64,000 nt of DNA, taken from the sequence record NC_042136.1, one strand, 5' to 3'. The notes beneath the pieces were generated by a model. The model did not search any database and was not told the origin of the DNA. It saw only the letters and a program-made list of their open reading frames with translations. Made by a program: the position numbers and the translations under genes. Below, piece after piece: positions 849 to 42,591 of this stretch (within the stretch, counting starts at the first letter, position 1; the number at the start of each line of letters is the position of its first letter).

Positions 849-2618
849 CTAAGCTGCTTTCGGTAAAGCCTCACCGAATTCTTCTTCAAAGAGTTCTGGG
901 AAGACTTCTTCCATTTCTTCGAATCCCGGGAAACGATGTAACGTCTGACACAAACTCACCGCATTAGCTTTTGGCGAGGAAGCGTAGTTGACTCCGACTT
1001 CACGGAACTCCAATGGATTCAATCCTTGTATCGCACACGCTTCTATTCTCGTGGTCTTATTCGAAACGTTAAGCGCTACGGTGGCCGTAGGGTATGCACC
1101 CTCCACGTCAACGTCATCGGTTAAACCACGTCCTCTAGAACGTATGTGTGGCATCCCTATGAATATCGCTTTACCGTTATCCGCATTTTTCTCAGTTTCT
1201 AATAAAGCAATCCAATCACCCAATGTCGGTTTATGTTTATCCAATTCATCTTTACCACCACGTCCCTTGGTTCCCCAAATGTAACCATGCTCCGCAGCAA
1301 TGAAAGATAACTCGTTAGAGATACATTTCGGTTGAGATGGATAATCAAAGAACTCCGTAGACTTTAATAGCAATGGTAAGTTCAGTGCAATGTCGTTGGT
1401 TTTCTCATCTTGTTCTTCGATAACCAAGTTATCAGAGATGTTGTACATGCAGTATTCGAACTTAGCATTACGTTGCATCCATCTGTGCCAAGCACCTTTA
1501 CCTTGGGTTAGATGAGACCCTTTATCCGTGTAAAGCTTACCCTCGATGCCGTTGTCTTGTGCAGTGAATTCCAATGAGTAAGATTCTTTCTTACCTTTAG
1601 GAGCATTCTTAATCGCGTAGAAACTAGCACCGTCCAACCACTGCCATTTAGCCGCCGCTCGAACCGTAGGGTATTGCTCTTGCCACTCTAACGGTTGGGA
1701 GTCACCGTTCTCTTTACGTTTGTGAGTACGTCCCTTATCGTATTTGTAGTAATGAAACTCTTTAGGGATACTAGGGTCTGAGTAAACTTCTTCTAGATTA
1801 CGATTACCCATAATCAACGCATGTTCATTACGCTGCATATCGTAGGAAGCGTTCCATGATGAAATGAAATCTGGTTCCCACATATGCCAAACTTTAATGT
1901 TGTTCTCAACACATTCAGTTTGAGTATCCACTAAGTTGTAATGCACCGTAGCGTTACGTCGTCTTAGACGTTCACCGATCAGTTCTTCTTCTGACGCTTT
2001 AAGACCCTTCATGATCTCTTCGTCAGACATACCATCAAAGAAACTACGCACTACGGAGAAAAAGATTTTCTCTTTCATCGTAGTTGAAGCCATGATCACA
2101 TCTTCACCATCACCGTTGACCATATCGGTCTCTACGTCGTACGCAGCTAAGGTGGAAGGTTCAGTTTCTTGGAACTCTTCATAACGTTCAAAGTATTTGT
2201 GTTTGATCAATACTGGAACTGGGGTTTCACAACCAAAGACATAAGGGTTGTTTTTCATCATCATTAAGTCGGCGTTACGATCATTAATACCGTGTAACAC
2301 ACGCTTAATGCTCATCGCTAAACGCGCTTGTGTAGATTTATATTCTTTCACTAAACGTTTATCGATGTAATCTTTTTTCTGTTCGAACTTACGGTATTTT
2401 TCACGAACGATGTAGAATGAACGAACGTAATCCGCCACTTTCAAAAACTGATTGGTACGGTCACCGTTTTCATGGATAGTCGTTTGTTTAATGAACGTCA
2501 TATCCTTAAGCTTGTCTCGTTTTGAAGGAACGTAGACAGCGTGTTTGCACACTTTTCCTTTAACAGGAGATTCGCTCGAAGGCGGCGTGTAACTATAATC
2601 CATTTCAGCCTTCCTCAT
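849..2618 (-). CDS. family B DNA polymerase, N-terminal/3'-5' exonuclease half of a split polymerase (phiKZ gp82-like)
   Basis: ExoI AYDVETD, ExoII SWNASYD, ExoIII-like YNISD, PolB motif A variant DVEGAYPT near the C-terminus; motifs B and C absent. Confidence 0.8.
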   Translation of the reverse strand: MRKAEMDYSYTPPSSESPVKGKVCKHAVYVPSKRDKLKDMTFIKQTTIHENGDRTNQFLKVADYVRSFYIVREKYRKFEQKKDYIDKRLVKEYKSTQARLAMSIKRVLHGINDRNADLMMMKNNPYVFGCETPVPVLIKHKYFERYEEFQETEPSTLAAYDVETDMVNGDGEDVIMASTTMKEKIFFSVVRSFFDGMSDEEIMKGLKASEEELIGERLRRRNATVHYNLVDTQTECVENNIKVWHMWEPDFISSWNASYDMQRNEHALIMGNRNLEEVYSDPSIPKEFHYYKYDKGRTHKRKENGDSQPLEWQEQYPTVRAAAKWQWLDGASFYAIKNAPKGKKESYSLEFTAQDNGIEGKLYTDKGSHLTQGKGAWHRWMQRNAKFEYCMYNISDNLVIEEQDEKTNDIALNLPLLLKSTEFFDYPSQPKCISNELSFIAAEHGYIWGTKGRGGKDELDKHKPTLGDWIALLETEKNADNGKAIFIGMPHIRSRGRGLTDDVDVEGAYPTATVALNVSNKTTRIEACAIQGLNPLEFREVGVNYASSPKANAVSLCQTLHRFPGFEEMEEVFPELFEEEFGEALPKAA

Positions 2619-2685: not shown

Positions 2686-4020
2686 ATGATTAGTAATAAG
2701 TTTCTAGCACCACAACTTCAAGTAGCTGGTTTAGAATTTATGGATTTCCAATCTAAAGACTTCTTTAACGAGATCGTAGCAGTACTTGCTCCTATGGTTG
2801 TCGACGGACAACTACACGAAGTACCAGCTGCAACTCACCGTGTCATCGAGAAGTACTGTGGATTTGCGAACCTTAAATTCAATCTGATTGACTACGGCAA
2901 CTTAGCCATTGACACTGGCTATGTTTCTCCGGGCAACATCCTTAACTCTAAAGGTATCGAGTATTACTTCCCTAAAGGTCAAACTAACCTTTATCGTTGG
3001 TTTACTCAAAACCAGAGTAATTTGTTACGTGGTTCTATTGATTTCAAAACAGGTAAGGTAGGTGGCGCGTACGCTGAACTGCCATTCGAACTATACATCA
3101 ACACAGATCTACGTTCGTTTATTTCCGGTGACGATCTCGATGACCAAACGATTACAGAAATGCTGGCAGGTTTCTTAACTCATGAGTTAGGTCATGCTTT
3201 CTCTGGCATTTTCGCGATCCACCGTTTCCTAATGGATTCTTACGCAATCACCGCCGCACTCCATTTCTTAAGTCACCAAGAATACGGTCAGACTGAAGTA
3301 GCGATTTACAAAGATGCTTGTCGTTTGATGGAAATCGAAGAGAAGCAAATTAAAGACTTACAGAAGATTGCTGAATCTGGTAATGAAGAAATCATCGTGG
3401 CTTCTCTAACTAAGCTTGCTCAGCAACGCACCCAAATGAACTCCCAATCACTAGGTGTGGATGAGATGAACTCTGAGGTACTGGCGGACGTTTACGCGGT
3501 CCGTATGGGTTGTGATAAACACCTAATCGATGCACTAAAACGTATGGATGATTCTACGTTCGATGGTATTGGTTTGAGTATCCTTTTCAACTCTTTGATG
3601 ACGGCTATTTTCTTTACGGCCTTTGTTCCAGCTCTAGCGGTGTTCTTAGGTGTGTTCGTATTGGCTTCTGGTTTTATGTCATTGATGTTGTTCAACATGA
3701 CCATGAGTTCGGATATTTACGATACTTCTTACCGTCGCTTACTTAACGTTCATCAAGAACAAATTGCTCGTCTTAAACAGAACAAAACGCTATCGGCTAA
3801 TGATCGTCGTAAAATGCTCGCTGATTTGGATAAGAACCTTAAACTCATCAAAGAGAACAAACCGTTCTTCGAAGATACTGCGGTTCAGCGTGTCATGCAA
3901 TGGTTGTTCCAATCATCTACGTCTAACTTCGATGCTTTGGAACACTACACTAAAATCCTGCTTAACAATGAAATGAGTATTGTTAATGCGAAAATTCAAC
4001 AACTTGGTAATGGAGCGTAA
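2686..4020 (+). CDS. probable virion head protein with zincin/M48-like metallopeptidase motifs and membrane segment
   Basis: AGLE-F processing-like site at E17; HELGH at 166-170; SEVLADVYAVRMG (E264); about 45-aa hydrophobic stretch from residue 294. Confidence 0.65.
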   Translation: MISNKFLAPQLQVAGLEFMDFQSKDFFNEIVAVLAPMVVDGQLHEVPAATHRVIEKYCGFANLKFNLIDYGNLAIDTGYVSPGNILNSKGIEYYFPKGQTNLYRWFTQNQSNLLRGSIDFKTGKVGGAYAELPFELYINTDLRSFISGDDLDDQTITEMLAGFLTHELGHAFSGIFAIHRFLMDSYAITAALHFLSHQEYGQTEVAIYKDACRLMEIEEKQIKDLQKIAESGNEEIIVASLTKLAQQRTQMNSQSLGVDEMNSEVLADVYAVRMGCDKHLIDALKRMDDSTFDGIGLSILFNSLMTAIFFTAFVPALAVFLGVFVLASGFMSLMLFNMTMSSDIYDTSYRRLLNVHQEQIARLKQNKTLSANDRRKMLADLDKNLKLIKENKPFFEDTAVQRVMQWLFQSSTSNFDALEHYTKILLNNEMSIVNAKIQQLGNGA

Positions 4021-4022
4021 TA

Positions 4023-4427
4023 ATGTCTCACCTTAATCATATCCTGAAACTAAACTCTAAGTTGGTTGATCAAGGAATCACTAATCCTGAACACCATCAG
4101 TCGGTAACGACTAACGCCGTAGTACGTGCTATCGTAGCTTACACTTACATCACTGGTGGGATTGACGGTCCAGCTATGACTAATGAAGCGGTAGCGCAAA
4201 TGGAACGTACAGTAGAGATGTGGAACGAAGTTTCTCCATTGGACTACGACACGATTTTCGAACGCACTAAAGCTGTGTTCCAACGTCTTTACAACCAAGC
4301 GGTGGCTGGTGGTAAGTTCACTCCTATTCTGGCGGATCAAATCGACGATATTGATCTAATGGAAATTCCTGAGTTCGAAAGTACCTTCAAGGCACTCCTG
4401 AACGAAATGATCGCGTACAACCGCTAA
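4023..4427 (+). CDS. hypothetical protein in virion operon
   Basis: 134-aa ORF tightly coupled to neighbours. Confidence 0.75.
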   Translation: MSHLNHILKLNSKLVDQGITNPEHHQSVTTNAVVRAIVAYTYITGGIDGPAMTNEAVAQMERTVEMWNEVSPLDYDTIFERTKAVFQRLYNQAVAGGKFTPILADQIDDIDLMEIPEFESTFKALLNEMIAYNR

Positions 4428-4436
4428 GGAGCTACC

Positions 4437-5888
4437 ATGAGTAAATCTCCTAATTTCGTTGAGATGGGTACAGCGACTACCGTTGGGGTTGATAATACCG
4501 ATCGTAAGGTTCTTATCGACTTAGACGAGACTTACGACGATCCAACAAACCCAGAAGAAACTAAAGCTTTAGAAGAATACCTAAAAACGGGTAAGCTAAG
4601 CAAGAAGGCTTTACAACAAGCATTGGTTACAGGTACTGAACGTTTTGAACCGGGATGCACGACACTGAATGGTGTCTTGGGTGGTGAATCCTTCATGGAG
4701 AACCTTTCTAAGCGTGCTGGTGAATTTGTTAAGGCGGTAATTAAAGCTATCAATGCTGCCGTTGGTTGGTTTTTGAATCAAACGCGTCGCATTCTGTCTT
4801 TCTTTACCGATACTCGTGAAATCACCAAAGCGGATGAAGTATTGCGTGATATCGAAAGTAAGTTGCAAGAAATGGGCGGGCCTAACTTTAATGTTATCGA
4901 TGTTCGTGAGCTGTTTGAGAATCAACCGGTTAACAGTCGTCGTCTTGCCGTAGTTCACAGTTTGCGTGCCCGCAATGATTCTACTTTAGAAGCGTCTAAG
5001 AAGCTCCTAGAGTGTGTCCCTGCGCTTAAAGAGTTCATCGTTGACATCAACCGTCAAGAACTCAATATCCGTCGTGTGAACGATCGTTTCCGTGCTTCTA
5101 TTGGTAAACTCCGTAAACGAGTACGTGAAGATTCCCTAAGCATGGGTGATCGTGCTAACTGGCAAGCTGATGTCATGGACATGGCAGCTCAAAACTTTAA
5201 CAAGCAGAAACTGCAACGTAACTACGCTAAGTTAATTCAAATCATGACTGATCGTACTTCCGGTAATTTGGATGACGATGCATTGTTTGCGAATTCTACT
5301 AAAGCGATGAGCTCGTTGTTGATCGCCACTAAAGATGACGTTCCTATGGGTGAATTCGCTGAACTCGCCAACGTAGGTAACCAAATCCGCGACATCGTGG
5401 TGGGCAACCCAGATGAGTTTTCTGTTCGACTTGATACGGATGAACTGAAAAAGCTTCAGGACATGGTCAAGCTAGATGACCTAGAGTTCTTGAAGAACAT
5501 CCCGGGACAGGACACTAACGAACTCGTTAACGTTTACCAGATGTACGTTTCTAAAGCAGGAAGTTACATCTCGGTACTTCGTCAGTCTGCGGATGTTGCG
5601 CTTAAGTTCTCAGCAGAGATCAACTACATCGCAGAATGGGCTCAACGTTACCAGTTCTTGCTCAGTGTTTATTCTTTAGGTACTCTTGAACAACGTAAAG
5701 AGCGCATCAAAGAGATCGAAACACAAACCGGTGTACCTTTGAATACTGGTAATCTGGAAGATGTTCCAGAAGACGTACGTCAAGGTATGGATCGCTCCCT
5801 ACAACGTATTTACGATTCGTTACTACCGGGTGTGAAACGTGAGATGAATTCACTTGGACGTAAACTTAACATGAAGGTGAACCTCTAA
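4437..5888 (+). CDS. internal head protein (processed-propeptide family)
   Basis: acidic N-terminal propeptide ending in GGE-SFMENL followed by an amphipathic helix, as in the paralogues at 13-24 kb. Confidence 0.65.
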   Translation: MSKSPNFVEMGTATTVGVDNTDRKVLIDLDETYDDPTNPEETKALEEYLKTGKLSKKALQQALVTGTERFEPGCTTLNGVLGGESFMENLSKRAGEFVKAVIKAINAAVGWFLNQTRRILSFFTDTREITKADEVLRDIESKLQEMGGPNFNVIDVRELFENQPVNSRRLAVVHSLRARNDSTLEASKKLLECVPALKEFIVDINRQELNIRRVNDRFRASIGKLRKRVREDSLSMGDRANWQADVMDMAAQNFNKQKLQRNYAKLIQIMTDRTSGNLDDDALFANSTKAMSSLLIATKDDVPMGEFAELANVGNQIRDIVVGNPDEFSVRLDTDELKKLQDMVKLDDLEFLKNIPGQDTNELVNVYQMYVSKAGSYISVLRQSADVALKFSAEINYIAEWAQRYQFLLSVYSLGTLEQRKERIKEIETQTGVPLNTGNLEDVPEDVRQGMDRSLQRIYDSLLPGVKREMNSLGRKLNMKVNL

Positions 5889-6619
5889 TGATTCGTGATA
5901 TTAATAAACGCTATCGTAAGGTGCGTAACGATGTTCGAGAATACGAACCAACCGTAACGACGTTCAAAGAGAAAATCGATGAATTGTCTGATGCGATGAA
6001 GCGTCCTGTGAGTTACGACACTTTAATGGAGATGTGTAAAATTGCTGAAGCGCTACCTAGTGAAATCCGAGAGGTGAAACTTCGTTGCACTAAAGCACCT
6101 TCCCACATCAATGGTGAACAATTCCGTTATTGTGTCCGTCTTCGTAGCAACAACGGTTTCGTAGACGTAAGTGTCATCAACGAAGGTAATCGTTTGTTAC
6201 ACGCTTACTATGAGTTAGCGGAATTGATGATTAAGTACACCACGGAACATCTTCAAGCAAATCCTAGTGAAACAAACAATCATAAAGCGATTTGTTTGTT
6301 CCGTGACATTGCTCGTTTCCAAACTTACATCGACGGTCCTTACTACGATGACCGAATGGAAATAGACTGGGAACGCATTTCTCCTGATGTGGATTACCTC
6401 ACTAACGGTTACACCATCGAAACCGTTAAGGATCGTATTCTTAACATAGCGAAGCGTGACCAAGTTAAAGGTCTTTACATTTGGAACTTGAAGTGGGATG
6501 TTGATCGTTTGTTGTCTATGGTTAACGCTATGGAGCAACTCATCGCTCGCATCGCTATATTTGGTATCGCTCGATTAGAGCTAACACCAGAGCAACTGGA
6601 TGCTATCGATCCTCAATAA
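5888..6619 (+). CDS. hypothetical protein
   Basis: 243-aa ORF overlapping previous stop (TAATG). Confidence 0.75.
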   Translation: MIRDINKRYRKVRNDVREYEPTVTTFKEKIDELSDAMKRPVSYDTLMEMCKIAEALPSEIREVKLRCTKAPSHINGEQFRYCVRLRSNNGFVDVSVINEGNRLLHAYYELAELMIKYTTEHLQANPSETNNHKAICLFRDIARFQTYIDGPYYDDRMEIDWERISPDVDYLTNGYTIETVKDRILNIAKRDQVKGLYIWNLKWDVDRLLSMVNAMEQLIARIAIFGIARLELTPEQLDAIDPQ

Positions 6620-16823: not shown

Positions 16824-17993
16824 ATGAAAAACAACGTCACACAAGCTCTGCGTATTTTGGCAGGGATGGAATCAGCCCCAGTAGAACTTGATTTGGAACA
16901 ACAAACCGTATTGGTTGAAGAAGTGGAAACCGTGCGTGCCGAGAATGAAGCAAATGAAGTGGCTTCTGAAATCACGGCTATGGTGAAAGAATCTGACCAA
17001 CGTGTTGAACATGAAACTGAGCTCGAACAAGTAGTAGACGGTTTAGAGTTCCTAAAGCAAAACCCTAACCCACAAGCCATGGTTCTGCTTTACGACCGCG
17101 CTGATCGTCTGCACGTTAAGCTTGGTGGTCAAACCACTAAACCGCGTGCTGGTTTAGAATCTATCGATACTCGTACCTTGGATGCACACGTCATTGTAGG
17201 TTGTGAGTCTTTCATGGATACCCTAAAACAAGGTGCTGACAACACGTTACAATTCTTAAAGTCTATTTGGAAACGTTTGGTAGAATACTTCAAAGCGAAG
17301 TTCTCTGAAACCGGTAAGATGAAGAAGCGTGCTGAAGAACTTAAGAAAAAACTTCAAGATGGCGCTGAACTAAAAGACGACCCTAAAGCGGGTCCTTGGT
17401 ATCAATTCTTAGAATATGCTAAGAAAGGGTGTGGTGCATTCGCCGGTAGTATTACATCAATGATCGAAATAATCGGACTACTGAACAACGGTACCGGTGA
17501 ACAAGTCATCAAGACTGCTCCAATACTTCATTCAATGTGTGAAGACATCCGCAAAGGTTCGCCTTCAGGAGCATCGATCAAAAAGAATGGTATCTGGACG
17601 GTTAATGCCGACGAGGGCGCGTTGGTCATCTACCCAGAGAAAGTACCTACTAACGCAGATGATGCTGTCGAGTTCTTCACTAAAGTCCGTATGGAGCTTA
17701 AGAAGTTTGAAGCTCCTAAAACCCAACCTGTTCTTAAACAAGGCGATCGTTCTAACTTGATTTCGACGTGTGAAGTGGTTTTATCTAACTTAGAAGAGAT
17801 CGGTGTTCTACAGAAGAAGATCGAGAACCAAGAGAAAAGCTTGGAAACTTCTTTGAAAGACATCGATAAAGCCGAAGCTCGTTTGATCCGCGCACAAAAC
17901 AACGCGATTGTTCGTTTGAGCACGTCGTCTTTGAACATGCGCATCCGTTCATCTAAAGCTCTACTAGAAATGGTATCGGCTTACATTAAGTAA
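16824..17993 (+). CDS. internal head protein, phiKZ_IP-like paralogue
   Basis: AGME-S, DGLE-F, AGLE-S, VGCE-SFMDT; K-AGPW motif. Confidence 0.75.
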   Translation: MKNNVTQALRILAGMESAPVELDLEQQTVLVEEVETVRAENEANEVASEITAMVKESDQRVEHETELEQVVDGLEFLKQNPNPQAMVLLYDRADRLHVKLGGQTTKPRAGLESIDTRTLDAHVIVGCESFMDTLKQGADNTLQFLKSIWKRLVEYFKAKFSETGKMKKRAEELKKKLQDGAELKDDPKAGPWYQFLEYAKKGCGAFAGSITSMIEIIGLLNNGTGEQVIKTAPILHSMCEDIRKGSPSGASIKKNGIWTVNADEGALVIYPEKVPTNADDAVEFFTKVRMELKKFEAPKTQPVLKQGDRSNLISTCEVVLSNLEEIGVLQKKIENQEKSLETSLKDIDKAEARLIRAQNNAIVRLSTSSLNMRIRSSKALLEMVSAYIK

Positions 17994-18000
17994 CGTAGTC

Positions 18001-18070
18001 TAAGGTAATCTTCGGGTTACCTTATCTTAATCTATCACGGTGGATTAAGATAAGACCGGACGCGGTCTTA
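18001..18070 (+). other. three overlapping consecutive hairpins in intergenic region
   Basis: 18001-18024 (UUCG loop), 18022-18053 (11-bp stem), 18051-18070 (8-bp stem). Confidence 0.75.
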
Positions 18071-18094
18071 GTATAACCTCATGAGGAAAATATT

Positions 18095-19339
18095 ATGTCT
18101 ATCCGTAATAAACTATCAGCAATGGCTGGTATGGAATCTTTGTCCCGAGATGAAGTGACCGATGATCTCCATAAAACGATTGTTGAAAACGTTTTCGGTG
18201 ATGGAGATCAAAACTTATCTCCTTCTATTGAAGCAGAACAACAACAAGTAGACGAAGCATTAGCTGACGCTACCACTGATGTTGAAGAATCAGTAAAACT
18301 GGTAGAAACTTACCTTGAACAAGAACAAAGTCAAGAAGAAGCCGTACAAGACCTCCATAAAGCCGTAGACGGAATGGAACAGCTTTTGATGACCGAATAC
18401 ACACCGGCAACCTTAAACGCTCTCACGCGTCATACAGAGCGTTGTGCTAAACGTGTTGGTATTCCGTTTACTTTAGGTGTGTCCGGTATGGAGTCCTTTA
18501 CTCCAGCTTCTGTTTATCTGGCGATGCGTGACGGTCTGGAATCTCTTGGGAATGTAGAGCGTGATAACGTAGGTTCTATCAAAGGCGGGTATGAGCGTCT
18601 TACTCACATATGTGATGATGTTGAAAAGCGTTTTGATCGTTTACTCGTTAATTTAGAGTTACTTCGTAAACGTCTTAAAGACAACCCTGAAATCAAATCA
18701 GAGATCGCCTTAGGGGAATGGAACAAATGGTTAGACGTACGTGACCGTACACCTAGACCGATCGTTCGTCTCGTCAACTTGATGGAAGTGGAATACATCC
18801 TAGACCGTATTAAAGTCTTGGACCTCATTGCTAAAGATGACCTAACTTCAGCGAAAGCACAAGAGTTGTTATCTAAGGACGTTAAGAAGTCGGTTGATGT
18901 ATCTCGTGAACGCACCGAAGATGGTAAGAACCACACCACGTGGGAGTTCCGTTTCAACACAGCTTGTTTCTACTTTGATCTTCCTAATCAAAACGGTACT
19001 TCGTTAGAAGCCTTGAAGGTATATAACCTTCGTATGGAACCCGCGACAGATCGTTACAACTCGAAATCTAAGAATGTTTATCAGCATCTAGACACCATGT
19101 TTAGTGAGCTAGACGAAATGATTTCTATTGCTGAGGATACCCGCTCGACTTATGTTGATTGGCGTAAGTCACTAAAGACCGAAAGTGGTATGGTGGTTTC
19201 AGCATTACAATCCGGTAAAGTCGATCCTAGTAAAGCACTGGCTTACATCGGTTTACATAACCGATTCATGGTAACCGCGCAACGCGGTATTTTCGAAGTC
19301 ATTTCAGCGTACGAACATCTGTTCCGTGCCCACATCTAA
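18095..19339 (+). CDS. internal head protein, phiKZ_IP-like paralogue
   Basis: AGME-S, DGME, SGME-SF, DGLE-S; IALGEWNKW motif. Confidence 0.75.
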   Translation: MSIRNKLSAMAGMESLSRDEVTDDLHKTIVENVFGDGDQNLSPSIEAEQQQVDEALADATTDVEESVKLVETYLEQEQSQEEAVQDLHKAVDGMEQLLMTEYTPATLNALTRHTERCAKRVGIPFTLGVSGMESFTPASVYLAMRDGLESLGNVERDNVGSIKGGYERLTHICDDVEKRFDRLLVNLELLRKRLKDNPEIKSEIALGEWNKWLDVRDRTPRPIVRLVNLMEVEYILDRIKVLDLIAKDDLTSAKAQELLSKDVKKSVDVSRERTEDGKNHTTWEFRFNTACFYFDLPNQNGTSLEALKVYNLRMEPATDRYNSKSKNVYQHLDTMFSELDEMISIAEDTRSTYVDWRKSLKTESGMVVSALQSGKVDPSKALAYIGLHNRFMVTAQRGIFEVISAYEHLFRAHI

Positions 19340-19357
19340 CTTAACAAGGAACTTATT

Positions 19358-20587
19358 ATGGTTATGAAACATAACCCTTTGATTGCTGCCATGGGTATGA
19401 CACGTGTGGCGGGTTGCGAATCTCTGGATCCTTCTACCGATACGACTGAAGAAATCCCAGCGGTAGTTGAACCTACTGAAGAAGAGAAAGCTTTGTCGGA
19501 AGCTCAAGAAAAGCTGAACGAAGCAGAACAAACTCTAGGTGAAGTTCTCCAACAAGAACAAAATCACCAAGCCACGGTTAAAGAAGCAGAAGAAGCGATT
19601 GCTGGTCTAGAGTCTATGTTCCAAGGTGAGTTCGACGAAACAGTTTATCGTCAACACGTGAACACACTGCAAGGCATCAGTAAACACACACAAATTCCTC
19701 TGTCAGTGACTGTTGATGGCATGGAGTCTTTAAGCTCTGCTCAGATCTACCTGAATACCGTGAATGGTTTAGAGTCTTTCATGGATACATTGAAAGCCGC
19801 AGGTAAGACTATTAAAGAGTTGGTCATTAGAGCTTACAATGCTTTGCTTGACTTACTACGTTCATTTAAGAACTTATTCTTGGGTTTGAACGCTAAACTA
19901 GCAAACACTAAGAAACGTCTTGACGCAACGGACGAGATTAAACCTAAAGCTAAACTGGGTAAGTGGAATAAATACCTAGGTACCGAGCATTTCTCGCCAG
20001 CCGAAATTGGGTCTATGAAAATCTTAACGGAACTAATGGTTAAGGCTTCTGAAGTCAAAATCCGTGATATGGGATCCAAGGACGATCTAGCTCGTAAAAA
20101 GGCGGTTGACGAACTGGCTTATCTCATTGCTAACGAATATGGCTTTATCCAATCTAAAGACGTAGACCGCACAGCTAACAAAGAAACCTACTACATGCGC
20201 ATCGGTAACACGGAATTCGAATATACGGTTCCGATGCGTTCATTACCAGTGGATAGTCTCTTATCGTTTGGTTTTGATCTGAAGTTCATGAAAGACACTA
20301 AAGATTCCGGAGAAGTTAAGGTCTACTTGGACAAACGACACATGGCGGATGACTTAGACGAAACTATCGAATTCGCTAAACACGCGCGTGACACGTTTGA
20401 TGAGCTAGACAAAGTGATCAAACGAGAACGCGATTCTTTGGTAGCAGCCGTCCATAATCCTGAGAGTATGGACCGACCAATGTTATTAGAGGCGATCAAA
20501 ATCAAACGTTCGCTTATTGAAAAGACTGAGCGAAGCATCTTCCATATCTTAGAAGCTAAGAATAGTTTGTTCTCTGCTCACCTTTAG
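19358..20587 (+). CDS. internal head protein, phiKZ_IP-like paralogue
   Basis: AGCE-S, AGLE-S, DGME-S, NGLE-SFMDT; KAKLGKWNKY motif. Confidence 0.75.
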   Translation: MVMKHNPLIAAMGMTRVAGCESLDPSTDTTEEIPAVVEPTEEEKALSEAQEKLNEAEQTLGEVLQQEQNHQATVKEAEEAIAGLESMFQGEFDETVYRQHVNTLQGISKHTQIPLSVTVDGMESLSSAQIYLNTVNGLESFMDTLKAAGKTIKELVIRAYNALLDLLRSFKNLFLGLNAKLANTKKRLDATDEIKPKAKLGKWNKYLGTEHFSPAEIGSMKILTELMVKASEVKIRDMGSKDDLARKKAVDELAYLIANEYGFIQSKDVDRTANKETYYMRIGNTEFEYTVPMRSLPVDSLLSFGFDLKFMKDTKDSGEVKVYLDKRHMADDLDETIEFAKHARDTFDELDKVIKRERDSLVAAVHNPESMDRPMLLEAIKIKRSLIEKTERSIFHILEAKNSLFSAHL

Positions 20588-20732
20588 TCACGTATGCATT
20601 ACAGTAATTATATGTAGAATACTATAGTACTGTAGTGCTACGCTTTTCATCATTACTTCAGTGGTGGTGTTTAGATAATTTAATTAAATTCTCTAGTCAA
20701 AAGACTAAACTAATTTTAAAGGAAACATTGAT

Positions 20733-21959
20733 ATGTCTCAAATTCGTAATATGCTTATGGCTCAAGCTGGCATGGAATCTCTAGATGCAGCTGAAGTTGC
20801 ACAAGTTGAAAAGACAGCTGAAGAAGTAGCTGAGCTAGTAGCAGATAAAGCTGCTGAAGAAATCAAAGCTGAAGTAAATGAACTGGCTGACGAAGTTGAA
20901 GAACTGTCTGAAGAGATCGAAGAGATCGAAGAAGACGTTGAAGAACTTGAAGAATGTGTTGACGGTATGGAAGCGCTGCTTAAAGCAGGTTCTTTCAACG
21001 GTGCTGCATTCGGCCTTCTTTACAACCGTGCAGAAAAACTAAACCGTAAACTTGGTGGCGCTGAAACTGGTGCTGTTGTTGGTGCTGAGTCTCTAGGTGA
21101 CGCAACTTCTGCGACTCTAGCAGCTCGCGCTGGCATGGAAGGCTTCATGGAAACTGCACGCGGCTACAAAGACGCAGCAGTTAAATTCATCATGTCTATG
21201 TACGAATCTCTAAAATCATTCGTTAAAGGCCTGTTCGACAAATCTGTAGCGATCGAAAACCAAGTTAAAGCGACTACCGCTCGTCTTGAGAAAGCTGAGA
21301 AAATGAAAGAAGACGTTAAGCCGGGCAAATGGGCTTCACTGGCTCTACTTCGTGACTCTAACAAACTTCGCGCTATCGTTACCGCAGCTGACGCAGTAGT
21401 TTCTGCTGGTGCTAAACTAACAGCTAACGATGTAGCTGGTTACGCTGGCGCTTACCGTACGCTGAAGAACGCTATCGAGAACCTAGCGAAAGACGGTCAG
21501 TCTAAAGCGAACAAATCTGGTGACGGCACTACTCACCAAATCCACTTCGGTAAAGTTGTTATCAGCGCTACTGTATTCGACGGTGAGATCAAAGAACTTG
21601 CTGACGTAAACAAAGCGGCTAAAGTAACTACTATCTCTTACTCTGTTGCAAAACAAGAAGGCGAAGTTTCTTTCAACGCGCTAACTAAAGAGTCTGCGAA
21701 AGGCTTCCTAAAATCAGCAGCGGCTGATGGCGTAATGCTTAAATCAATGAAAGAAGCGAAAGCAGGTAACGAGAAAGGTCGTGACGAGCTAGTAGCTGCG
21801 CTTAAGAAAGTTGAAGGTAAGCAAGAAGATTGGGTTAAACCATCGATCTCTGCACTGAAAGCTTCTACAGCGATGACTAACCGTGTGTTCACTGTTGTTG
21901 CTAAGATCCTAGGTAACGTTGCTGACGCGAAAATCGCGGCAGTTAAAGCATACCTTTAA
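20733..21959 (+). CDS. major (high-copy) internal head protein, phiKZ_IP-like paralogue
   Basis: AGME-S, DGME-A, GAE-S, AGME-GFMET; codon bias as strong as the capsid gene. Confidence 0.8.
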   Translation: MSQIRNMLMAQAGMESLDAAEVAQVEKTAEEVAELVADKAAEEIKAEVNELADEVEELSEEIEEIEEDVEELEECVDGMEALLKAGSFNGAAFGLLYNRAEKLNRKLGGAETGAVVGAESLGDATSATLAARAGMEGFMETARGYKDAAVKFIMSMYESLKSFVKGLFDKSVAIENQVKATTARLEKAEKMKEDVKPGKWASLALLRDSNKLRAIVTAADAVVSAGAKLTANDVAGYAGAYRTLKNAIENLAKDGQSKANKSGDGTTHQIHFGKVVISATVFDGEIKELADVNKAAKVTTISYSVAKQEGEVSFNALTKESAKGFLKSAAADGVMLKSMKEAKAGNEKGRDELVAALKKVEGKQEDWVKPSISALKASTAMTNRVFTVVAKILGNVADAKIAAVKAYL

Positions 21960-40398: not shown

Positions 40399-42591
40399 AT
40401 GAAAAGAAATATCGTAGCTCAGCTAGGTTCTTCTAACGCTGGCGTTTACCTTGGTATTAAGAACGCGCTAAACTCTGGTGCTTTTGACGCTGTAGCTGGC
40501 ACAGAGTCTTTCTCTACAGCACAAACAGCTCTTGAAGCAGTAACAGGTTCTGAGTCTTTTGGCGGTCAAGCTAAAGAAACTCTAAAAGGCATGGGTTCTG
40601 AACAAGTTCATGCTGTGATCGGTACGGTTCAACGTATGATCAACAGCAACGCTGTTGCAGGCATGGAATCTTTGATCGAATCTGAAAAATCAGTTGCTGG
40701 TCTTGAAGGTTTCTCTTGGGCACAATCTGCTGGTCTTTCTAACGAATCTAAAGCAGCGTCTATCACACTTAACGCTCTAGCACACCGTCAAACTGACGCA
40801 GCTGAAGCGATGTTCAAAACAGTAAGCATCCCTTACGAAAGTGAACAACTAGAGTACACGGTTCGTACATCAGGCCTAGGTCGTTACATCTACGGCGCGT
40901 CTGCTTACGACCAAGCTTCTCAACTACAACCAGTAACTAGCCTACTTCGTCAATCTCAATACTTCCTTGACGACACGCTAGAACTACACCCAGTTTTCCC
41001 AGCGTCTAAAGACAGCCCTGCGCGTAAACTATTCGTAGATCCAACTGACTTCACTCCTTGGGAGCAAAGCTATTCTGAAGCAGATTCTCTACGTCGTGAC
41101 ACTCACGAAACTTCTTTCCTACGTGTAGGTAAGTCTATCCCTAACCTTCTAGGTCTATCTGAAGTACCGGGACAAACTCCTTACGATTCTTCAGTTGATG
41201 AAATCGAAGCGAACTCAATCACTGTACAGAAAGTTCTGTTCAAAGTGAACATTGACGGTACTGAGCAAGTAGTTGTTCTTCCTACTTTCAACTTCACTAA
41301 CTCATCTTTCGGTGTAACTTCAACTGGTCAATCATCTGATGATCGTCAACTAAGCATGACTGTTAAAGGTCTGCCAGTATCAGCGTTCACAGACAAAGAT
41401 GGTGCGGCTTCTACAGCGTTTGATGCACTACAAGCAGCTGGTGCTAAAGCATTCTTCGGCTTTAACCTAAGCGGTACTTTCCAACGTCAAACTTACTCTC
41501 TAAGCACTTCAGCTTCTGATCTGAACCTAGAGTACATTGAGCTAGACGGTGTGAAACACAACGCTTCTACTAAGAACACTGCTGTTAAAGCACTGTTCGC
41601 TAAGTACGCTGAAGGTGAAGTAATCGGTTGGTTGCCTTCTTACAACCACAACAACGTTAACCGTACTAACTTCGGTTACCGTGTTGAAGTGTTCGATGCA
41701 CACAAAGTAATGAACGTTCGTCGTGAAACTCCTATCTCTGTGAAATACCCAGTTGATAAGCAAGACGTAAACGAAGGTTCTCTAAGCTTCGCGATCGACG
41801 AAATGAACACCATCCTGCAAGCACAAACAACTGCCAAAGCTTACAAAGCAGCAGCAGGTCACATTGCACGTGTTGCTTCACTAAACGGTCACGCTATCGT
41901 TGGTAACGAGCAATCTGCTTCAGTAATGGCTGGCATGCACTTCGTTAACGCTTCTTACCTAAAACGTAGCATGAAACTAGCTGACGCTGTGTCTGCACTA
42001 GATTCAACTACCGTTCTAGAAGCGGTAGAGAAAACAATCACTATGAACATCACAGAAATCTGTGCTGCTCTAAGTACTGTTTCTGGTCTAGCTGCAATCA
42101 GCGAATACCGTCGTATCGAGAAAAAGTGGACTATCATCGGTCACCAAAACTTGGCTCGTTACATGATCCGTCAAGGCGACGCTCGTACTCTTGGTAATGG
42201 CATCAGCTTCAAGACTATCGACTCTAACCTAGATGAAATGATCGGTAAGTTCTACATCATCCCTGAGTCAGAAACTACTGATAACAACATCGACGTGATC
42301 GGCGGCATGGGTGTAATGATCTCTAAAGAGCATCAAGTAATCCAAGCTAACCTAACTCGTAACAACGCGGACTTCGGTATCGTGATCACTCAACCAGCGT
42401 ACAAACACCACTCAGTGTGTCCAATCGTTGGTGTGCTAGAGATCGAAGATGCAGTACACGCGCTAGACGAAGAAGGCCTAATCCGTTACCTAAACAAACA
42501 ACGTGTGAGCGTTGTTAACGCTGGCGAATTCCCAGCAGCAGGCGCAGCGGACAACGCAGCAACTGAAACTGAAACTGGTAAACTACCTTAG
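40399..42591 (+). CDS. major capsid protein (phiKZ gp120-like)
   Basis: 730 aa, extreme codon bias, propeptide with G-x-E sites at E36, E52, E90, E103; strong terminator after; gene order helicase-192aa-MCP-356aa-RNAP. Confidence 0.85.
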   Translation: MKRNIVAQLGSSNAGVYLGIKNALNSGAFDAVAGTESFSTAQTALEAVTGSESFGGQAKETLKGMGSEQVHAVIGTVQRMINSNAVAGMESLIESEKSVAGLEGFSWAQSAGLSNESKAASITLNALAHRQTDAAEAMFKTVSIPYESEQLEYTVRTSGLGRYIYGASAYDQASQLQPVTSLLRQSQYFLDDTLELHPVFPASKDSPARKLFVDPTDFTPWEQSYSEADSLRRDTHETSFLRVGKSIPNLLGLSEVPGQTPYDSSVDEIEANSITVQKVLFKVNIDGTEQVVVLPTFNFTNSSFGVTSTGQSSDDRQLSMTVKGLPVSAFTDKDGAASTAFDALQAAGAKAFFGFNLSGTFQRQTYSLSTSASDLNLEYIELDGVKHNASTKNTAVKALFAKYAEGEVIGWLPSYNHNNVNRTNFGYRVEVFDAHKVMNVRRETPISVKYPVDKQDVNEGSLSFAIDEMNTILQAQTTAKAYKAAAGHIARVASLNGHAIVGNEQSASVMAGMHFVNASYLKRSMKLADAVSALDSTTVLEAVEKTITMNITEICAALSTVSGLAAISEYRRIEKKWTIIGHQNLARYMIRQGDARTLGNGISFKTIDSNLDEMIGKFYIIPESETTDNNIDVIGGMGVMISKEHQVIQANLTRNNADFGIVITQPAYKHHSVCPIVGVLEIEDAVHALDEEGLIRYLNKQRVSVVNAGEFPAAGAADNAATETETGKLP

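What the first reader, a model, noticed from the sequence alone, without database searches (positions are those of the whole stretch)
2686..4020. Probable head-packaged membrane zinc metalloprotease
Seen: AGLE-F site at E17 like the other head proteins; HELGH (166-170); SEVLADVYAVRMG (E264), matching the E-x-x-A-D-x-x-A third-ligand motif of M48/HtpX-type zincins; a 45-aa hydrophobic block (about 294-338). Established: the known chimallivirus head protease is a serine protease, so this would be a second, different enzyme. Inference: an ejected protease that anchors in the inner membrane or EPI vesicle and cleaves phage ejection proteins or host defence proteins in the first minutes of infection.
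Basis: partly seen in the sequence, partly recalled or inferred. Interest (0 to 1): 0.75.

Follow-up and report, generated by a model that had tools for sequence, protein, structure and literature searches.

The report
Head-packaged M48-like zinc protease
This Vibrio jumbo-phage gene is the local copy of a core, apparently essential head protein of nucleus-forming phages (phiKZ gp84 / SPN3US gp45) that carries unvarying zinc-protease residues and a membrane-type hydrophobic hairpin, so it is probably a second protease carried inside the capsid; what it cuts has never been tested.

Summary
The window is Vibrio phage VP4B. ORF 2686-4020 (444 aa) has AGLE|F at 14-18, HELGH at 166-170, the E264 ExxAD motif and an uncharged 294-342 block.

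It is the orthologue of phiKZ gp84, SPN3US gp45 and Goslar gp067, which is Chimalliviridae core gene cg22. SPN3US gp45 is shown by mass spectrometry to be a head protein cut by the prohead protease at ASE-20, and that Glu aligns with VP4B E17. In 170 diverse relatives E17, H166, E167, G169, H170 and E264 are 100% conserved.

The closest family is M48:
- 30 of 110 relatives hit Pfam Peptidase_M48, and five of ten tested pass its cut-off.
- ZMPSTE24 and HtpX align co-linearly over both motifs.
- VP4B's own protein gives no Pfam hit.
- Foldseek against the PDB found nothing, and the geometry of the metal site could not be measured.

phiKZ TnSeq shows no disruptive insertions in gp84.

Head packaging and the M48-like active site are well supported. 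Ejection, membrane anchoring and early substrates remain inference. Some GenBank records already call orthologues M48 proteases, so this is a new member of a known but uncharacterised family. Interest is moderate.

The parts
2686..4020 (+). Whole gene: 444-aa precursor (50.1 kDa), orthologue of phiKZ gp84 / SPN3US gp45 / Goslar gp067 (Chimalliviridae core gene cg22; PHROG 2767)
   Evidence: PHROG 2767, E 1.9e-120, full length; 100% identical to VP4B KC131130 126686-128020; hhalign to phiKZ gp84, 99.3%; core-gene table
2686..2736 (+). Predicted N-terminal propeptide M1-E17 (1.9 kDa), a short capsid-targeting-type leader removed by the prohead protease
   Evidence: E17 is 100% conserved and P3 is G/S/A in 94%. 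E17 aligns with the mass-spectrometry-proven SPN3US gp45 site ASE-20 (PMC10052503 Table 2). pLDDT is below 50 for residues 1-16
2725..2739 (+). Cleavage motif A14-G-L-E17 | F18
   Evidence: AG[LM]E is enriched about 11-fold in window head proteins. The S/A/G-x-E rule for phiKZ-type prohead proteases is given in PMC10449902
2755..3564 (+). Catalytic domain, residues 24-293: N-terminal helices, a small beta-sheet, the active-site helix, helical inserts and the Glu helix
   Evidence: AF2 domain model has pLDDT 85 and pTM 0.82. Full model has pLDDT 79 and pTM 0.80
3031..3066 (+). Family-specific motif G116-x-x-D119-x-x-T-G-K-V-x-G127 (G127 invariant), just before the strand that precedes the active-site helix; role unknown
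3181..3195 (+). H166-E-L-G-H170: two zinc ligands plus the catalytic glutamate, inside helix 153-196
   Evidence: 100% conserved. Aligned to HELGH of ZMPSTE24 and HEISH of HtpX
3472..3510 (+). S263-E264-V-L-A-D268...R273-M-G275: putative third zinc ligand in the M48-type E-x-x-A-D motif, at the start of helix 263-273
   Evidence: E264 100%, D268 99.4%, R273 94%, G275 98%. Aligned to E415-F-Q-A-D of ZMPSTE24 and to the E-F-H-A-D motif of HtpX
3565..3711 (+). Uncharged hydrophobic block 294-342, predicted as two helices (295-313, 317-340) joined by a 3-residue turn at P315: a membrane-type hairpin
   Evidence: pLDDT 83-93; the only TM-like segment in any of 170 relatives, always at this position
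3718..3738 (+). Y345-D-x-x-x-x-R351 (family consensus Y-D-x-P-x-x-R), right after the hairpin; possible counterpart of the C-terminal H-x5-R motif of M48 enzymes
   Evidence: Y is 97% conserved (His in the other 3%) and R is 99.4% conserved. The hhalign alignment runs co-linearly into the HtpX H-P-P-L-D-K-R region. Suggestive only
3727..4017 (+). C-terminal all-helical domain, residues 348-444; function unknown
   Evidence: five helices, pLDDT 66-89
4023..4427 (+). Downstream neighbour, phiKZ gp85-like head protein (134 aa)
   Evidence: PHROG 14520, E 7e-55. Same order as in phiKZ, SPN3US, EL, Goslar, Moabite and PCH45
4437..5888 (+). Second downstream neighbour, phiKZ gp86-like head protein (483 aa)
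   Evidence: PHROG 14541, E 1.2e-206. Synteny as above
849..2618 (-). Divergent upstream neighbour, DNA polymerase (conserved synteny marker)
   Evidence: PHROG 3011, E 4e-222. Same arrangement in EL and Goslar

Best explanation
The gene encodes VP4B's copy of Chimalliviridae core protein cg22 (phiKZ gp84 / SPN3US gp45).

Steps shown here or by experiment on orthologues:
- It is a head-internal virion protein made as a precursor. Its short N-terminal leader, ending in A-G-L-E17, is the substrate of the phage's prohead protease.
- The mature protein would run from F18 to A444 (48.3 kDa).
- The family keeps an invariant HExxH...ExxAD gluzincin signature, and its nearest family is M48 (HtpX / Ste24).
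- The gene tolerates no disruptive transposon insertion in phiKZ.

Inferred:
- H166, H170 and E264 hold one zinc ion, and E167 activates water, so the protein is an active metalloprotease distinct from the prohead protease.
- The two hydrophobic helices (295-340) form a hairpin. This puts both flanking catalytic elements, the E264 helix before it and Y345/R351 after it, at a membrane surface, as in HtpX, Ste24 and BlaR1.
- The protein leaves the capsid with the DNA and the other internal head proteins, inserts into the cytoplasmic-membrane-derived envelope of the early infection (EPI) vesicle, and cuts membrane-proximal phage or host proteins in the first minutes of infection.

My estimates: head protein processed at E17, about 0.9. 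Active M48-like zinc protease, about 0.75. Ejected and membrane-inserted, about 0.35.
For: - Identity and orthology: (cg22 = Goslar gp067 / phiKZ gp084 / RAY gp286).
- Head location and processing: phiKZ gp84 is annotated 'structural head protein'. SPN3US gp45 was found in purified tailless heads and is cut at ASE-20, giving a mature mass of 48.2 kDa. That Glu aligns with E17, which is 100% conserved with G/S/A at P3 in 94%. AG[LM]E is enriched in VP4B head proteins.
- Protease: H166, E167, H170 and E264 are 100% conserved in 170 relatives down to 17% identity.
- Pfam: 30 of 110 relatives hit Peptidase_M48, and no other family is hit by more than 2. Five of ten tested pass the 20.3-bit cut-off with one stretch spanning both motifs.
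- Family profile against PDB sequences: ZMPSTE24 scores E 0.0047 with both motifs co-linear.
- hhalign against 79 HtpX sequences: P 1.3e-4, co-linear over HExxH, ExxAD and the C-terminus.
- Foldseek against the viral library: matches to 'Zincin protease' (phage AR9), 'Peptidase M48 domain-containing protein' and 'Beta-barrel assembly-enhancing protease' at E 5e-5 to 3e-3.
- The GenBank note for Moabite gp103 reports HHpred 98% to HtpX 3CQB.
- Hairpin.
- Essentiality: phiKZ TnSeq shows 0 filtered insertions in a 1242-bp gene against one insertion per 42 bp genome-wide.
- All 14 cleavages seen in SPN3US heads obey A-x-E, so this enzyme leaves no visible mark on head proteins, which fits a post-ejection role.
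Against: - The VP4B protein itself gives no Pfam, NCBIfam or PDB sequence hit.
- Foldseek of both AF2 models against the PDB found no protease and nothing with E below 0.7.
- hhalign probability to HtpX is only 54-56%.
- The hairpin lies after the Glu helix, not between HExxH and Glu as in HtpX.
- On a crude insertion scale only 18 of 170 relatives show two clear TM windows, 106 show one and 46 show none.
- No data show ejection of gp84 or gp45. It was not among the proteins tested in the phiKZ injection assay.
- The TnSeq result could be a polar effect on gp85 or gp86.
- VP4B virions have not been analysed.
Confidence: 0.6

Rival explanations
1. Capsid-internal housekeeping protease. The enzyme works inside the prohead or head during assembly and is not an ejected effector. 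It might degrade released propeptides or scaffold fragments, or process inner-body proteins. The hydrophobic hairpin would be a protein-protein interface or core element.
For: It is a head protein and apparently essential. Long propeptides of 111-254 residues must be cleared from these heads. The full-length AF2 model is compact, with pTM 0.80 and the hairpin at high pLDDT, so the hairpin may pack against the rest.
Against: Every cleavage detected in SPN3US heads and virions fits the A-x-E rule of the prohead protease, and recombinant gp245 reproduces gp53 processing in vitro. A conserved 30-49-residue uncharged segment placed next to the catalytic elements is typical of membrane-bound M48/M56 enzymes, not of soluble ones.
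Confidence: 0.2
2. Ejected soluble enzyme. The protein is an active metalloprotease delivered with the DNA but acts in the EPI-vesicle lumen or cytoplasm. The hairpin stays buried and never spans a bilayer.
For: 46 of 170 relatives have no window passing a crude membrane-insertion threshold, and the median uncharged run is only 32 residues. The protein must be stored water-soluble inside the capsid.
Against: The segment is the only strongly hydrophobic one in the protein. It is kept at one position in 98% of relatives and reaches KD 2.6 in VP4B.
Confidence: 0.15
3. Non-catalytic structural or ejection-channel protein. The zincin site serves only as a structural metal site or a relic, and the essential role is mechanical, for example part of a trans-envelope conduit built by hydrophobic helices.
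For: No activity has ever been shown. Foldseek against the PDB finds no protease. Other phages do eject membrane-inserting proteins (general knowledge of T7 and P22 ejection proteins).
Against: The catalytic Glu E167, which is not a metal ligand, is as invariant as the ligands in 170 sequences at 17-20% identity, as are D268 and R351. Relics do not stay invariant at that depth.
Confidence: 0.07
4. Chance motifs in an ordinary hypothetical protein.
For: HExxH alone is common by chance, and the single sequence has no Pfam hit.
Against: The motifs are invariant across 170 relatives (2377 clusters at E 0.001 or better in the profile search) and match M48 co-linearly.
Confidence: 0.01

Closest known systems
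SPN3US gp45 / phiKZ gp84 / Goslar gp067 (Chimalliviridae core gene cg22; PHROG 2767)
   Same: Full-length homologue with the same gene order (DNA polymerase | cg22 | gp85 | gp86 | gp87), the same invariant residues, the same short leader ending in G/S/A-x-E, and the same mature mass (48.2-48.3 kDa).
   Different: Only 17-18% identity to these three; 79% to Vibrio phage pTD1. The published entries say 'head, unknown function' or 'putative virion structural protein', and no function has been assigned in the papers I could search.
HtpX (M48B, bacterial inner-membrane zinc protease)
   Same: HExxH, the E-x-x-A-D third-ligand motif followed by K/R-x-G, a C-terminal aromatic/His-x5-R motif, and an active site placed next to membrane helices.
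   Different: HtpX has two N-terminal TM helices and a TM pair between HExxH and the Glu. The phage protein has no N-terminal TM and its hairpin follows the Glu helix. It also has about 60 extra residues with its own invariant Gly motif before the active-site helix, a 100-residue C-terminal helical domain and a capsid-targeting leader. Similarity is below family thresholds for VP4B itself.
ZMPSTE24 / Ste24p (M48A, CAAX prenyl protease)
   Same: Best true hit among solved structures by sequence profile. HELGH and E415-F-Q-A-D align co-linearly with H166-H170 and E264-D268.
   Different: ZMPSTE24 is a seven-TM barrel enzyme. E-values are only 0.005-0.05, and Foldseek gave no match.
BlaR1 / MecR1 (M56 membrane gluzincins)
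   Same: A membrane-anchored HExxH...E zincin that cleaves at the membrane surface. This comparison rests on my own knowledge and was not tested here.
   Different: A sensor-transducer with a penicillin-binding domain. No sequence hit was obtained here.
T4 internal proteins with capsid-targeting sequences (IPI-III, Alt)
   Same: A short N-terminal leader ending at the prohead-protease site directs packaging into the head and is removed; the proteins are ejected with the DNA. The SPN3US authors make the same comparison for gp45.
   Different: No homology, and none of these T4 proteins is known to me as a metalloprotease or as carrying a membrane hairpin (from my own knowledge).
phiKZ gp175 / SPN3US gp245 prohead protease
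   Same: Also a protease inside the prohead.
   Different: A serine protease (from my knowledge of Thomas & Black 2013, cited) that cuts after S/A/G-x-E. The protein studied here is its substrate, not its relative.

Membership tests
Chimalliviridae core gene cg22 (phiKZ gp84 / SPN3US gp45; PHROG 2767) | Full-length sequence homology | tested here: met
   PHROG 2767 E 1.9e-120 over residues 4-440. Profile against phiKZ gp84: 99.3% probability, E 4.7e-20. tblastn finds 157 jumbo-phage records.
Chimalliviridae core gene cg22 (phiKZ gp84 / SPN3US gp45; PHROG 2767) | Conserved gene neighbourhood (DNA polymerase divergent upstream in most; gp85-like and gp86-like head genes downstream; gp87-like gene convergent) | tested here: met
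Chimalliviridae core gene cg22 (phiKZ gp84 / SPN3US gp45; PHROG 2767) | Short N-terminal propeptide ending in the prohead-protease motif | tested here: met
   AGLE17 aligns with SPN3US ASE-20. E is 100% conserved and P3 is G/S/A in 94%. The actual cleavage in VP4B has not been observed.
Chimalliviridae core gene cg22 (phiKZ gp84 / SPN3US gp45; PHROG 2767) | Physical presence in the head of the virion | not testable with these tools
   Shown for SPN3US and annotated for phiKZ. No VP4B proteome is available.
Peptidase M48 (Pfam PF01435; MEROPS clan MA gluzincins) | HExxH on a helix | tested here: met
   HELGH 166-170 lies within predicted helix 153-196 and is invariant.
Peptidase M48 (Pfam PF01435; MEROPS clan MA gluzincins) | Third ligand Glu in E-x-x-A-D on a downstream helix | tested here: met
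   E264-V-L-A-D268 at the start of helix 263-273. Aligned to the ZMPSTE24 and HtpX motifs. E 100% and D 99.4% conserved.
Peptidase M48 (Pfam PF01435; MEROPS clan MA gluzincins) | Score above Pfam's gathering cut-off (20.3 bits) | tested here: not met
   VP4B protein: no hit even at E 10. Relatives do pass: P0108 25.2, P0067 25.0, P0118 24.9, P0102 21.3 and Moabite gp103 20.4 bits. 30 of 110 hit at E 0.01 or better. Membership therefore rests on transitive homology.
Peptidase M48 (Pfam PF01435; MEROPS clan MA gluzincins) | Fold similarity to a solved M48 structure | tested here: inconclusive
   Foldseek against the PDB with the full model and with the 24-293 domain model gave nothing below E 0.7. 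The viral library gives zincin/M48-named proteins at E 5e-5 to 3e-3. A GenBank note reports HHpred 98% to 3CQB for an orthologue; I could not rerun that.
Peptidase M48 (Pfam PF01435; MEROPS clan MA gluzincins) | C-terminal His-x5-Arg motif near the active site | tested here: inconclusive
   Y345-x5-R351 (Y 97%, H 3%; R 99.4%). hhalign extends co-linearly into the HtpX H-P-P-L-D-K-R region, but the residue register is not exact.
Peptidase M48 (Pfam PF01435; MEROPS clan MA gluzincins) | Ligands converge on one metal site; zinc-dependent peptidase activity | not testable with these tools
HtpX-type membrane topology (M48B) | TM helices N-terminal to the catalytic domain and between HExxH and the Glu ligand | tested here: not met
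   The only hydrophobic segment is 294-342, after the Glu helix. None was found elsewhere in 170 relatives.
Secreted protein or lipoprotein (as implied by the 'M48 family lipoprotein protease' label on Moabite gp103) | N-terminal signal peptide or lipobox | tested here: not met
   The N-terminus has no hydrophobic core or Cys, and it is the prohead-protease leader.

The most novel reading that the evidence does not exclude
cg22 is the (or a) virion-delivered integral membrane enzyme of the early phage infection vesicle. Ejected with the genome, its hairpin enters the membrane that wraps the incoming DNA, and its juxtamembrane zinc site performs an essential cut. The cut could activate another ejected protein, remodel or seal the vesicle, release the genome to the nascent nucleus, or remove a host membrane-bound defence or quality-control factor. 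If so, this would be the first identified membrane component, and the first enzymatic step, of a phage-made membrane organelle.
Probability: 0.15. Interest if true: 0.8.

Novelty: new member of a known kind. Interest (0 to 1): 0.5.

Why it matters
Nucleus-forming jumbo phages first enclose their injected genome in a membrane vesicle. The 2025 review of the field says that the vesicle's formation, its channels and the hand-over of the genome to the nucleus are all unexplained.

cg22 combines properties that no protein studied so far in these phages combines:
- conserved in all chimalliviruses examined, and also beyond them;
- intolerant of disruption in phiKZ;
- packaged in the head behind a T4-like targeting leader;
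- carrying both an invariant metalloprotease site and the only membrane-type segment in the protein.

This turns a protein listed as 'head, unknown function' into a concrete hypothesis that a point mutation can test. It also means these capsids probably carry two unrelated proteases with different jobs.

If the enzyme instead acts inside the capsid, it would revise the current one-protease picture of giant-head maturation.

Tried and rejected
Searches that gave nothing:
- Single-sequence searches of the VP4B protein against Pfam, the PDB and NCBIfam: nothing usable.
- Foldseek against the PDB, twice, with the whole model and with a purpose-built domain model of residues 24-293: no protease and no significant hit.
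- phmmer of two Pfam-positive relatives against the PDB: nothing.

Weak results:
- hhalign against my HtpX alignments reached only 54-56% probability. The alignments had 12 and then 79 sequences, all at 64% identity or more to E. coli HtpX, and the two database calls used to build them returned only close relatives.

Literature:
- Searches for gp84, gp084 and PHIKZ084, for metalloprotease or M48 or HtpX with jumbo phages or chimalliviruses, and text searches of the phiKZ and Goslar structural atlases, the EPI-vesicle papers and the 2025 review: no functional statement on this protein.
- Thomas 2012 (phiKZ head proteolysis) is not held in the library.

Readings rejected:
- Signal peptide or lipoprotein: the N-terminus is the protease leader.
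- Chance HExxH: the motif is invariant across the family.
- HtpX-like topology: the hairpin is on the other side of the Glu helix.
- Neighbours gp85-like and gp86-like as obvious membrane partners: neither has a hydrophobic segment.

Full report
WHAT THE WINDOW IS. The 1335-base stretch is 100% identical to Vibrio phage VP4B (KC131130 / NC_042136) 126686-128020, where it is annotated 'hypothetical protein'. VP4B (Tidunavirus) is listed among the chimallin-encoding jumbo phages in Prichard et al. 2023. The ORF 2686-4020 (+) is intact, with an ATG start and 444 codons.

OBSERVATION CHECK.
- AGLEF is at 14-18, so E17 is P1.
- HELGH is at 166-170.
- SEVLADVYAVRMG is at 263-275 (E264).
- A stretch with no charged residue runs from 294 to 342, with 19-residue Kyte-Doolittle means up to 2.6.

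The phrase 'like the other head proteins' also holds. AG[LM]E occurs 9 times in the window's ORFs of at least 100 aa, against 0.83 +/- 0.90 in residue shuffles with a maximum of 5 in 500. Apart from this ORF, the motif occurs only in four tandem 'internal head protein' paralogues (16824-21959) and in the major head protein at 40399-42591.

WHAT FAMILY IT IS. The protein matches PHROG 2767 ('unknown function') end to end at E 1.9e-120. tblastn finds it in 157 jumbo-phage records, including EL, OBP, SPN3US, Goslar, PCH45, RSL2 and many Erwinia, Aeromonas and Serratia phages. A profile search of 1.84 billion representatives finds 2377 clusters at E 0.001 or better, and nearly all of the 150 best are 410-480 aa.

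The phiKZ member is gp84, with hhalign probability 99.3% and E 4.7e-20. In the core-genome table of Prichard et al. the gene is cg22 = Goslar gp067 / phiKZ gp084 / RAY gp286, described as 'putative virion structural protein'. It is not marked as unique to chimallin phages.

Gene order is conserved: cg22, a gp85-like gene and a gp86-like head gene downstream in all of them; the divergent DNA polymerase upstream is annotated in EL and Goslar and the convergent gp87-like gene in phiKZ and Moabite.

HEAD LOCATION AND PROCESSING. This is experimental for orthologues and inferred for VP4B.
- phiKZ gp84 is annotated 'structural head protein'.
- In SPN3US, gp45 was found by mass spectrometry in virions and in purified tailless heads.
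- It is one of only nine substrates of the prohead protease gp245. It is cut at ASE-20, with a predicted mass of 50.3 kDa and a mature mass of 48.2 kDa, and is listed as 'Head, unknown function'.
- Its 20-residue leader is compared by those authors with T4 capsid-targeting sequences.

In my alignment the SPN3US E20 falls in the same column as VP4B E17. Across 170 family representatives that Glu is 100% conserved, P3 is G/S/A in 160 of 170, and most leaders are 7-21 residues long. This matches the S/A/G-x-E rule re-confirmed for phiKZ. The predicted VP4B mature protein, F18-A444, is 48.25 kDa.

Some metagenomic relatives carry 400-800 extra N-terminal residues and still keep an x-x-E junction (G at P3 in three of the four, T in P0113). 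If those gene calls are real, the site works as an internal release site there.

IS IT A ZINC PROTEASE? Conservation is the strongest argument. At 17-20% overall identity, H166, E167, G169, H170 and E264 are invariant in 170 of 170 sequences. D268 is 99.4% conserved, R273 94%, G275 98%, Y345 97% (the rest His) and R351 99.4%. The catalytic E167, which is not a metal ligand, is as fixed as the ligands, and this argues against a relic or purely structural site.

Family assignment is weaker but consistent.
- The VP4B protein alone has no Pfam hit.
- However, 30 of 110 relatives hit Peptidase_M48 at E 0.01 or better, while no other family is hit by more than two.
- Five of ten relatives tested pass Pfam's own cut-off (20.3 bits; scores 20.4-25.2); in the four metagenomic ones a single stretch covers both HExxH and ExxAD, while the Moabite gp103 stretch (50-180) reaches only HExxH.
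- A 148-sequence profile finds ZMPSTE24 as the best genuine solved-structure hit, at E 0.0047. HELGH aligns to HELGH and E264-x-x-A-D to E415-F-Q-A-D.
- hhalign against 79 HtpX sequences gives one co-linear alignment over HExxH, ExxAD and the C-terminus, with P 1.3e-4 and probability 54%.
- In the viral structure library the full model matches family members. Below them it matches proteins named 'Zincin protease' (two in Bacillus phage AR9), 'Peptidase M48 domain-containing protein' and 'Beta-barrel assembly-enhancing protease', at E 5e-5 to 3e-3.
- GenBank already labels Moabite gp103 'M48 family lipoprotein protease (HHpred 98% to 3CQB HtpX; BLAST hit to phiKZ084)', and the Proteus phage 7 orthologue 'beta-barrel assembly-enhancing protease'.

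Several results count against the assignment.
- Foldseek against the PDB found nothing, neither with the full model (pLDDT 79, pTM 0.80) nor with a domain model of residues 24-293 (pLDDT 85, pTM 0.82).
- NCBIfam gave only noise.

My reading is that this is a divergent M48-like gluzincin by transitive homology, with probability about 0.75 of being catalytically active.

ARCHITECTURE. The predicted order is:
- a disordered leader (1-16);
- two helices;
- a small sheet (63-75, 117-139) interrupted by a low-confidence loop, with a family-specific invariant motif G116...D119..TGKV.G127;
- a long active-site helix (153-196) carrying HELGH;
- helical inserts;
- the Glu helix (263-273) and one more helix (277-292);
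- two hydrophobic helices (295-313, 317-340) joined by a three-residue turn at P315;
- immediately after, Y345-x5-R351;
- a five-helix C-terminal domain.

The hydrophobic segment is the only one in the protein in all 170 relatives and always sits at this place. A hairpin is therefore the AF2 prediction and fits VP4B's 49 uncharged residues, but a shorter re-entrant or monotopic anchor is possible in other members.

Topology differs from HtpX, where the TM pair lies between HExxH and the Glu. If Y345/R351 is the counterpart of the M48 C-terminal His-x5-Arg motif, then a hairpin brings it back beside the E264 helix. The active site would then sit at the membrane surface. The spacing is the same as HtpX H276...R282, but the register is not exact.

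HOW IT MOST LIKELY WORKS.

Shown:
- head protein by orthology;
- a leader ending in the prohead-protease motif;
- an invariant gluzincin signature;
- a conserved hydrophobic hairpin;
- apparent essentiality. In the phiKZ TnSeq, PHIKZ084 has 0 filtered insertions in 1242 bp against one per 42 bp genome-wide, as do gp85-87, with the authors' own caveat about polar effects.

Inferred:
- The precursor is targeted to the prohead, and the prohead protease removes residues 1-17.
- The mature zinc enzyme is stored among the internal head proteins.
- Like many of these (vRNAP and inner-body proteins) it leaves with the DNA.
- The hairpin inserts into the membrane that forms the EPI vesicle.
- The juxtamembrane site then cleaves phage or host proteins.

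One piece of indirect support for a post-ejection role comes from SPN3US. All 14 cleavages seen in its heads follow A-x-E, so this second protease leaves no detectable mark on head proteins.

The main rival is a capsid-internal clean-up or maturation role. It cannot be excluded, and I give it 0.2. Other rivals are a soluble ejected enzyme whose hairpin stays buried (0.15) and a non-catalytic structural role (0.07).

COMPARISON AND NOVELTY. The protein is a clear member of cg22 / gp84 / gp45. It works like a membrane-proximal M48 enzyme (HtpX / Ste24) but differs from them in four ways:
- it fails the Pfam threshold on its own;
- it has a different TM arrangement;
- it carries phage-specific inserts;
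- it has a capsid-targeting leader.

The papers I could search call it only a head or virion protein of unknown function. The structural atlases of phiKZ and Goslar, the EPI-vesicle papers and the 2025 review do not mention it or any metalloprotease. The M48 reading does already exist in a few database annotations. So the finding is a new member of a known, functionally uncharacterised family.

VERDICT.
- Observation: confirmed.
- Interpretation: partly supported.
- Confidence in the combined best explanation: 0.6. Head protein processed at E17 about 0.9, active M48-like protease about 0.75, ejected and membrane-inserted about 0.35.
- Interest: 0.5.

Noticed in passing
window 16824-17993, 18095-19339, 19358-20587, 20733-21959 (+): Four tandem paralogous 'internal head protein' genes (PHROG 5750, about 390-414 aa). 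Three carry AGME|S at residues 11-16, and three have a further AG[LM]E site at about 82-137. This predicts a short leader plus, in three of them, a second more distal cut, like the SPN3US gp53/gp54 and phiKZ gp93-95 families.
   Followed up: partly
window 40399-42591 (+): The major head protein (PHROG 3231) has AGME|S at 87-91 and AGLE|G at 100-104. These are candidate maturation sites that would remove a propeptide of about 90-103 residues (SPN3US removes 130).
   Followed up: partly
proteins P0098, P0113, P0122, P0134 (metagenomic relatives): The complete cg22 module sits at the C-terminus of 825-1237-aa proteins. The extra 400-800 N-terminal residues match no PHROG, and the junction keeps the x-x-E motif (G-I-E, T-T-E, G-M-E, G-M-E). 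These are either real fusions released by the prohead protease or gene-calling artefacts.
   Followed up: partly
window 3031-3066 (+), residues 116-127: A family-specific Gly-rich motif, G-x-x-D-x-x-T-G-K-V-x-G (G127 100%, G116 92%, V125 89% conserved). It has no counterpart in the HtpX alignment and no assigned role. It lies just before the strand that precedes the active-site helix, so it may shape the substrate cleft.
   Followed up: no
window 849-2618 (-) and 4437-5888 (+): The longest ORFs start upstream of the GenBank CDS starts. GenBank has 849-2552 for the DNA polymerase and 4464-5888 for the gp86-like gene, so the start codons of both neighbours are uncertain.
   Followed up: no
BFVD matches to model md67186bb2297: Bacillus phage AR9, a jumbo phage with phiKZ-type RNA polymerases that as far as I know lacks chimallin, has two proteins named 'Zincin protease' that match the model at E 3e-4 and 3e-3. 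This fits cg22 not being marked as unique to chimallin phages and suggests the module predates the phage nucleus.
   Followed up: no
window 5888-6619 (+): A 243-aa ORF (PHROG 27739, unknown function) sits between the gp86-like gene and the gp87-like gene. EL has a gene of the same size at this place, but phiKZ does not.
   Followed up: no
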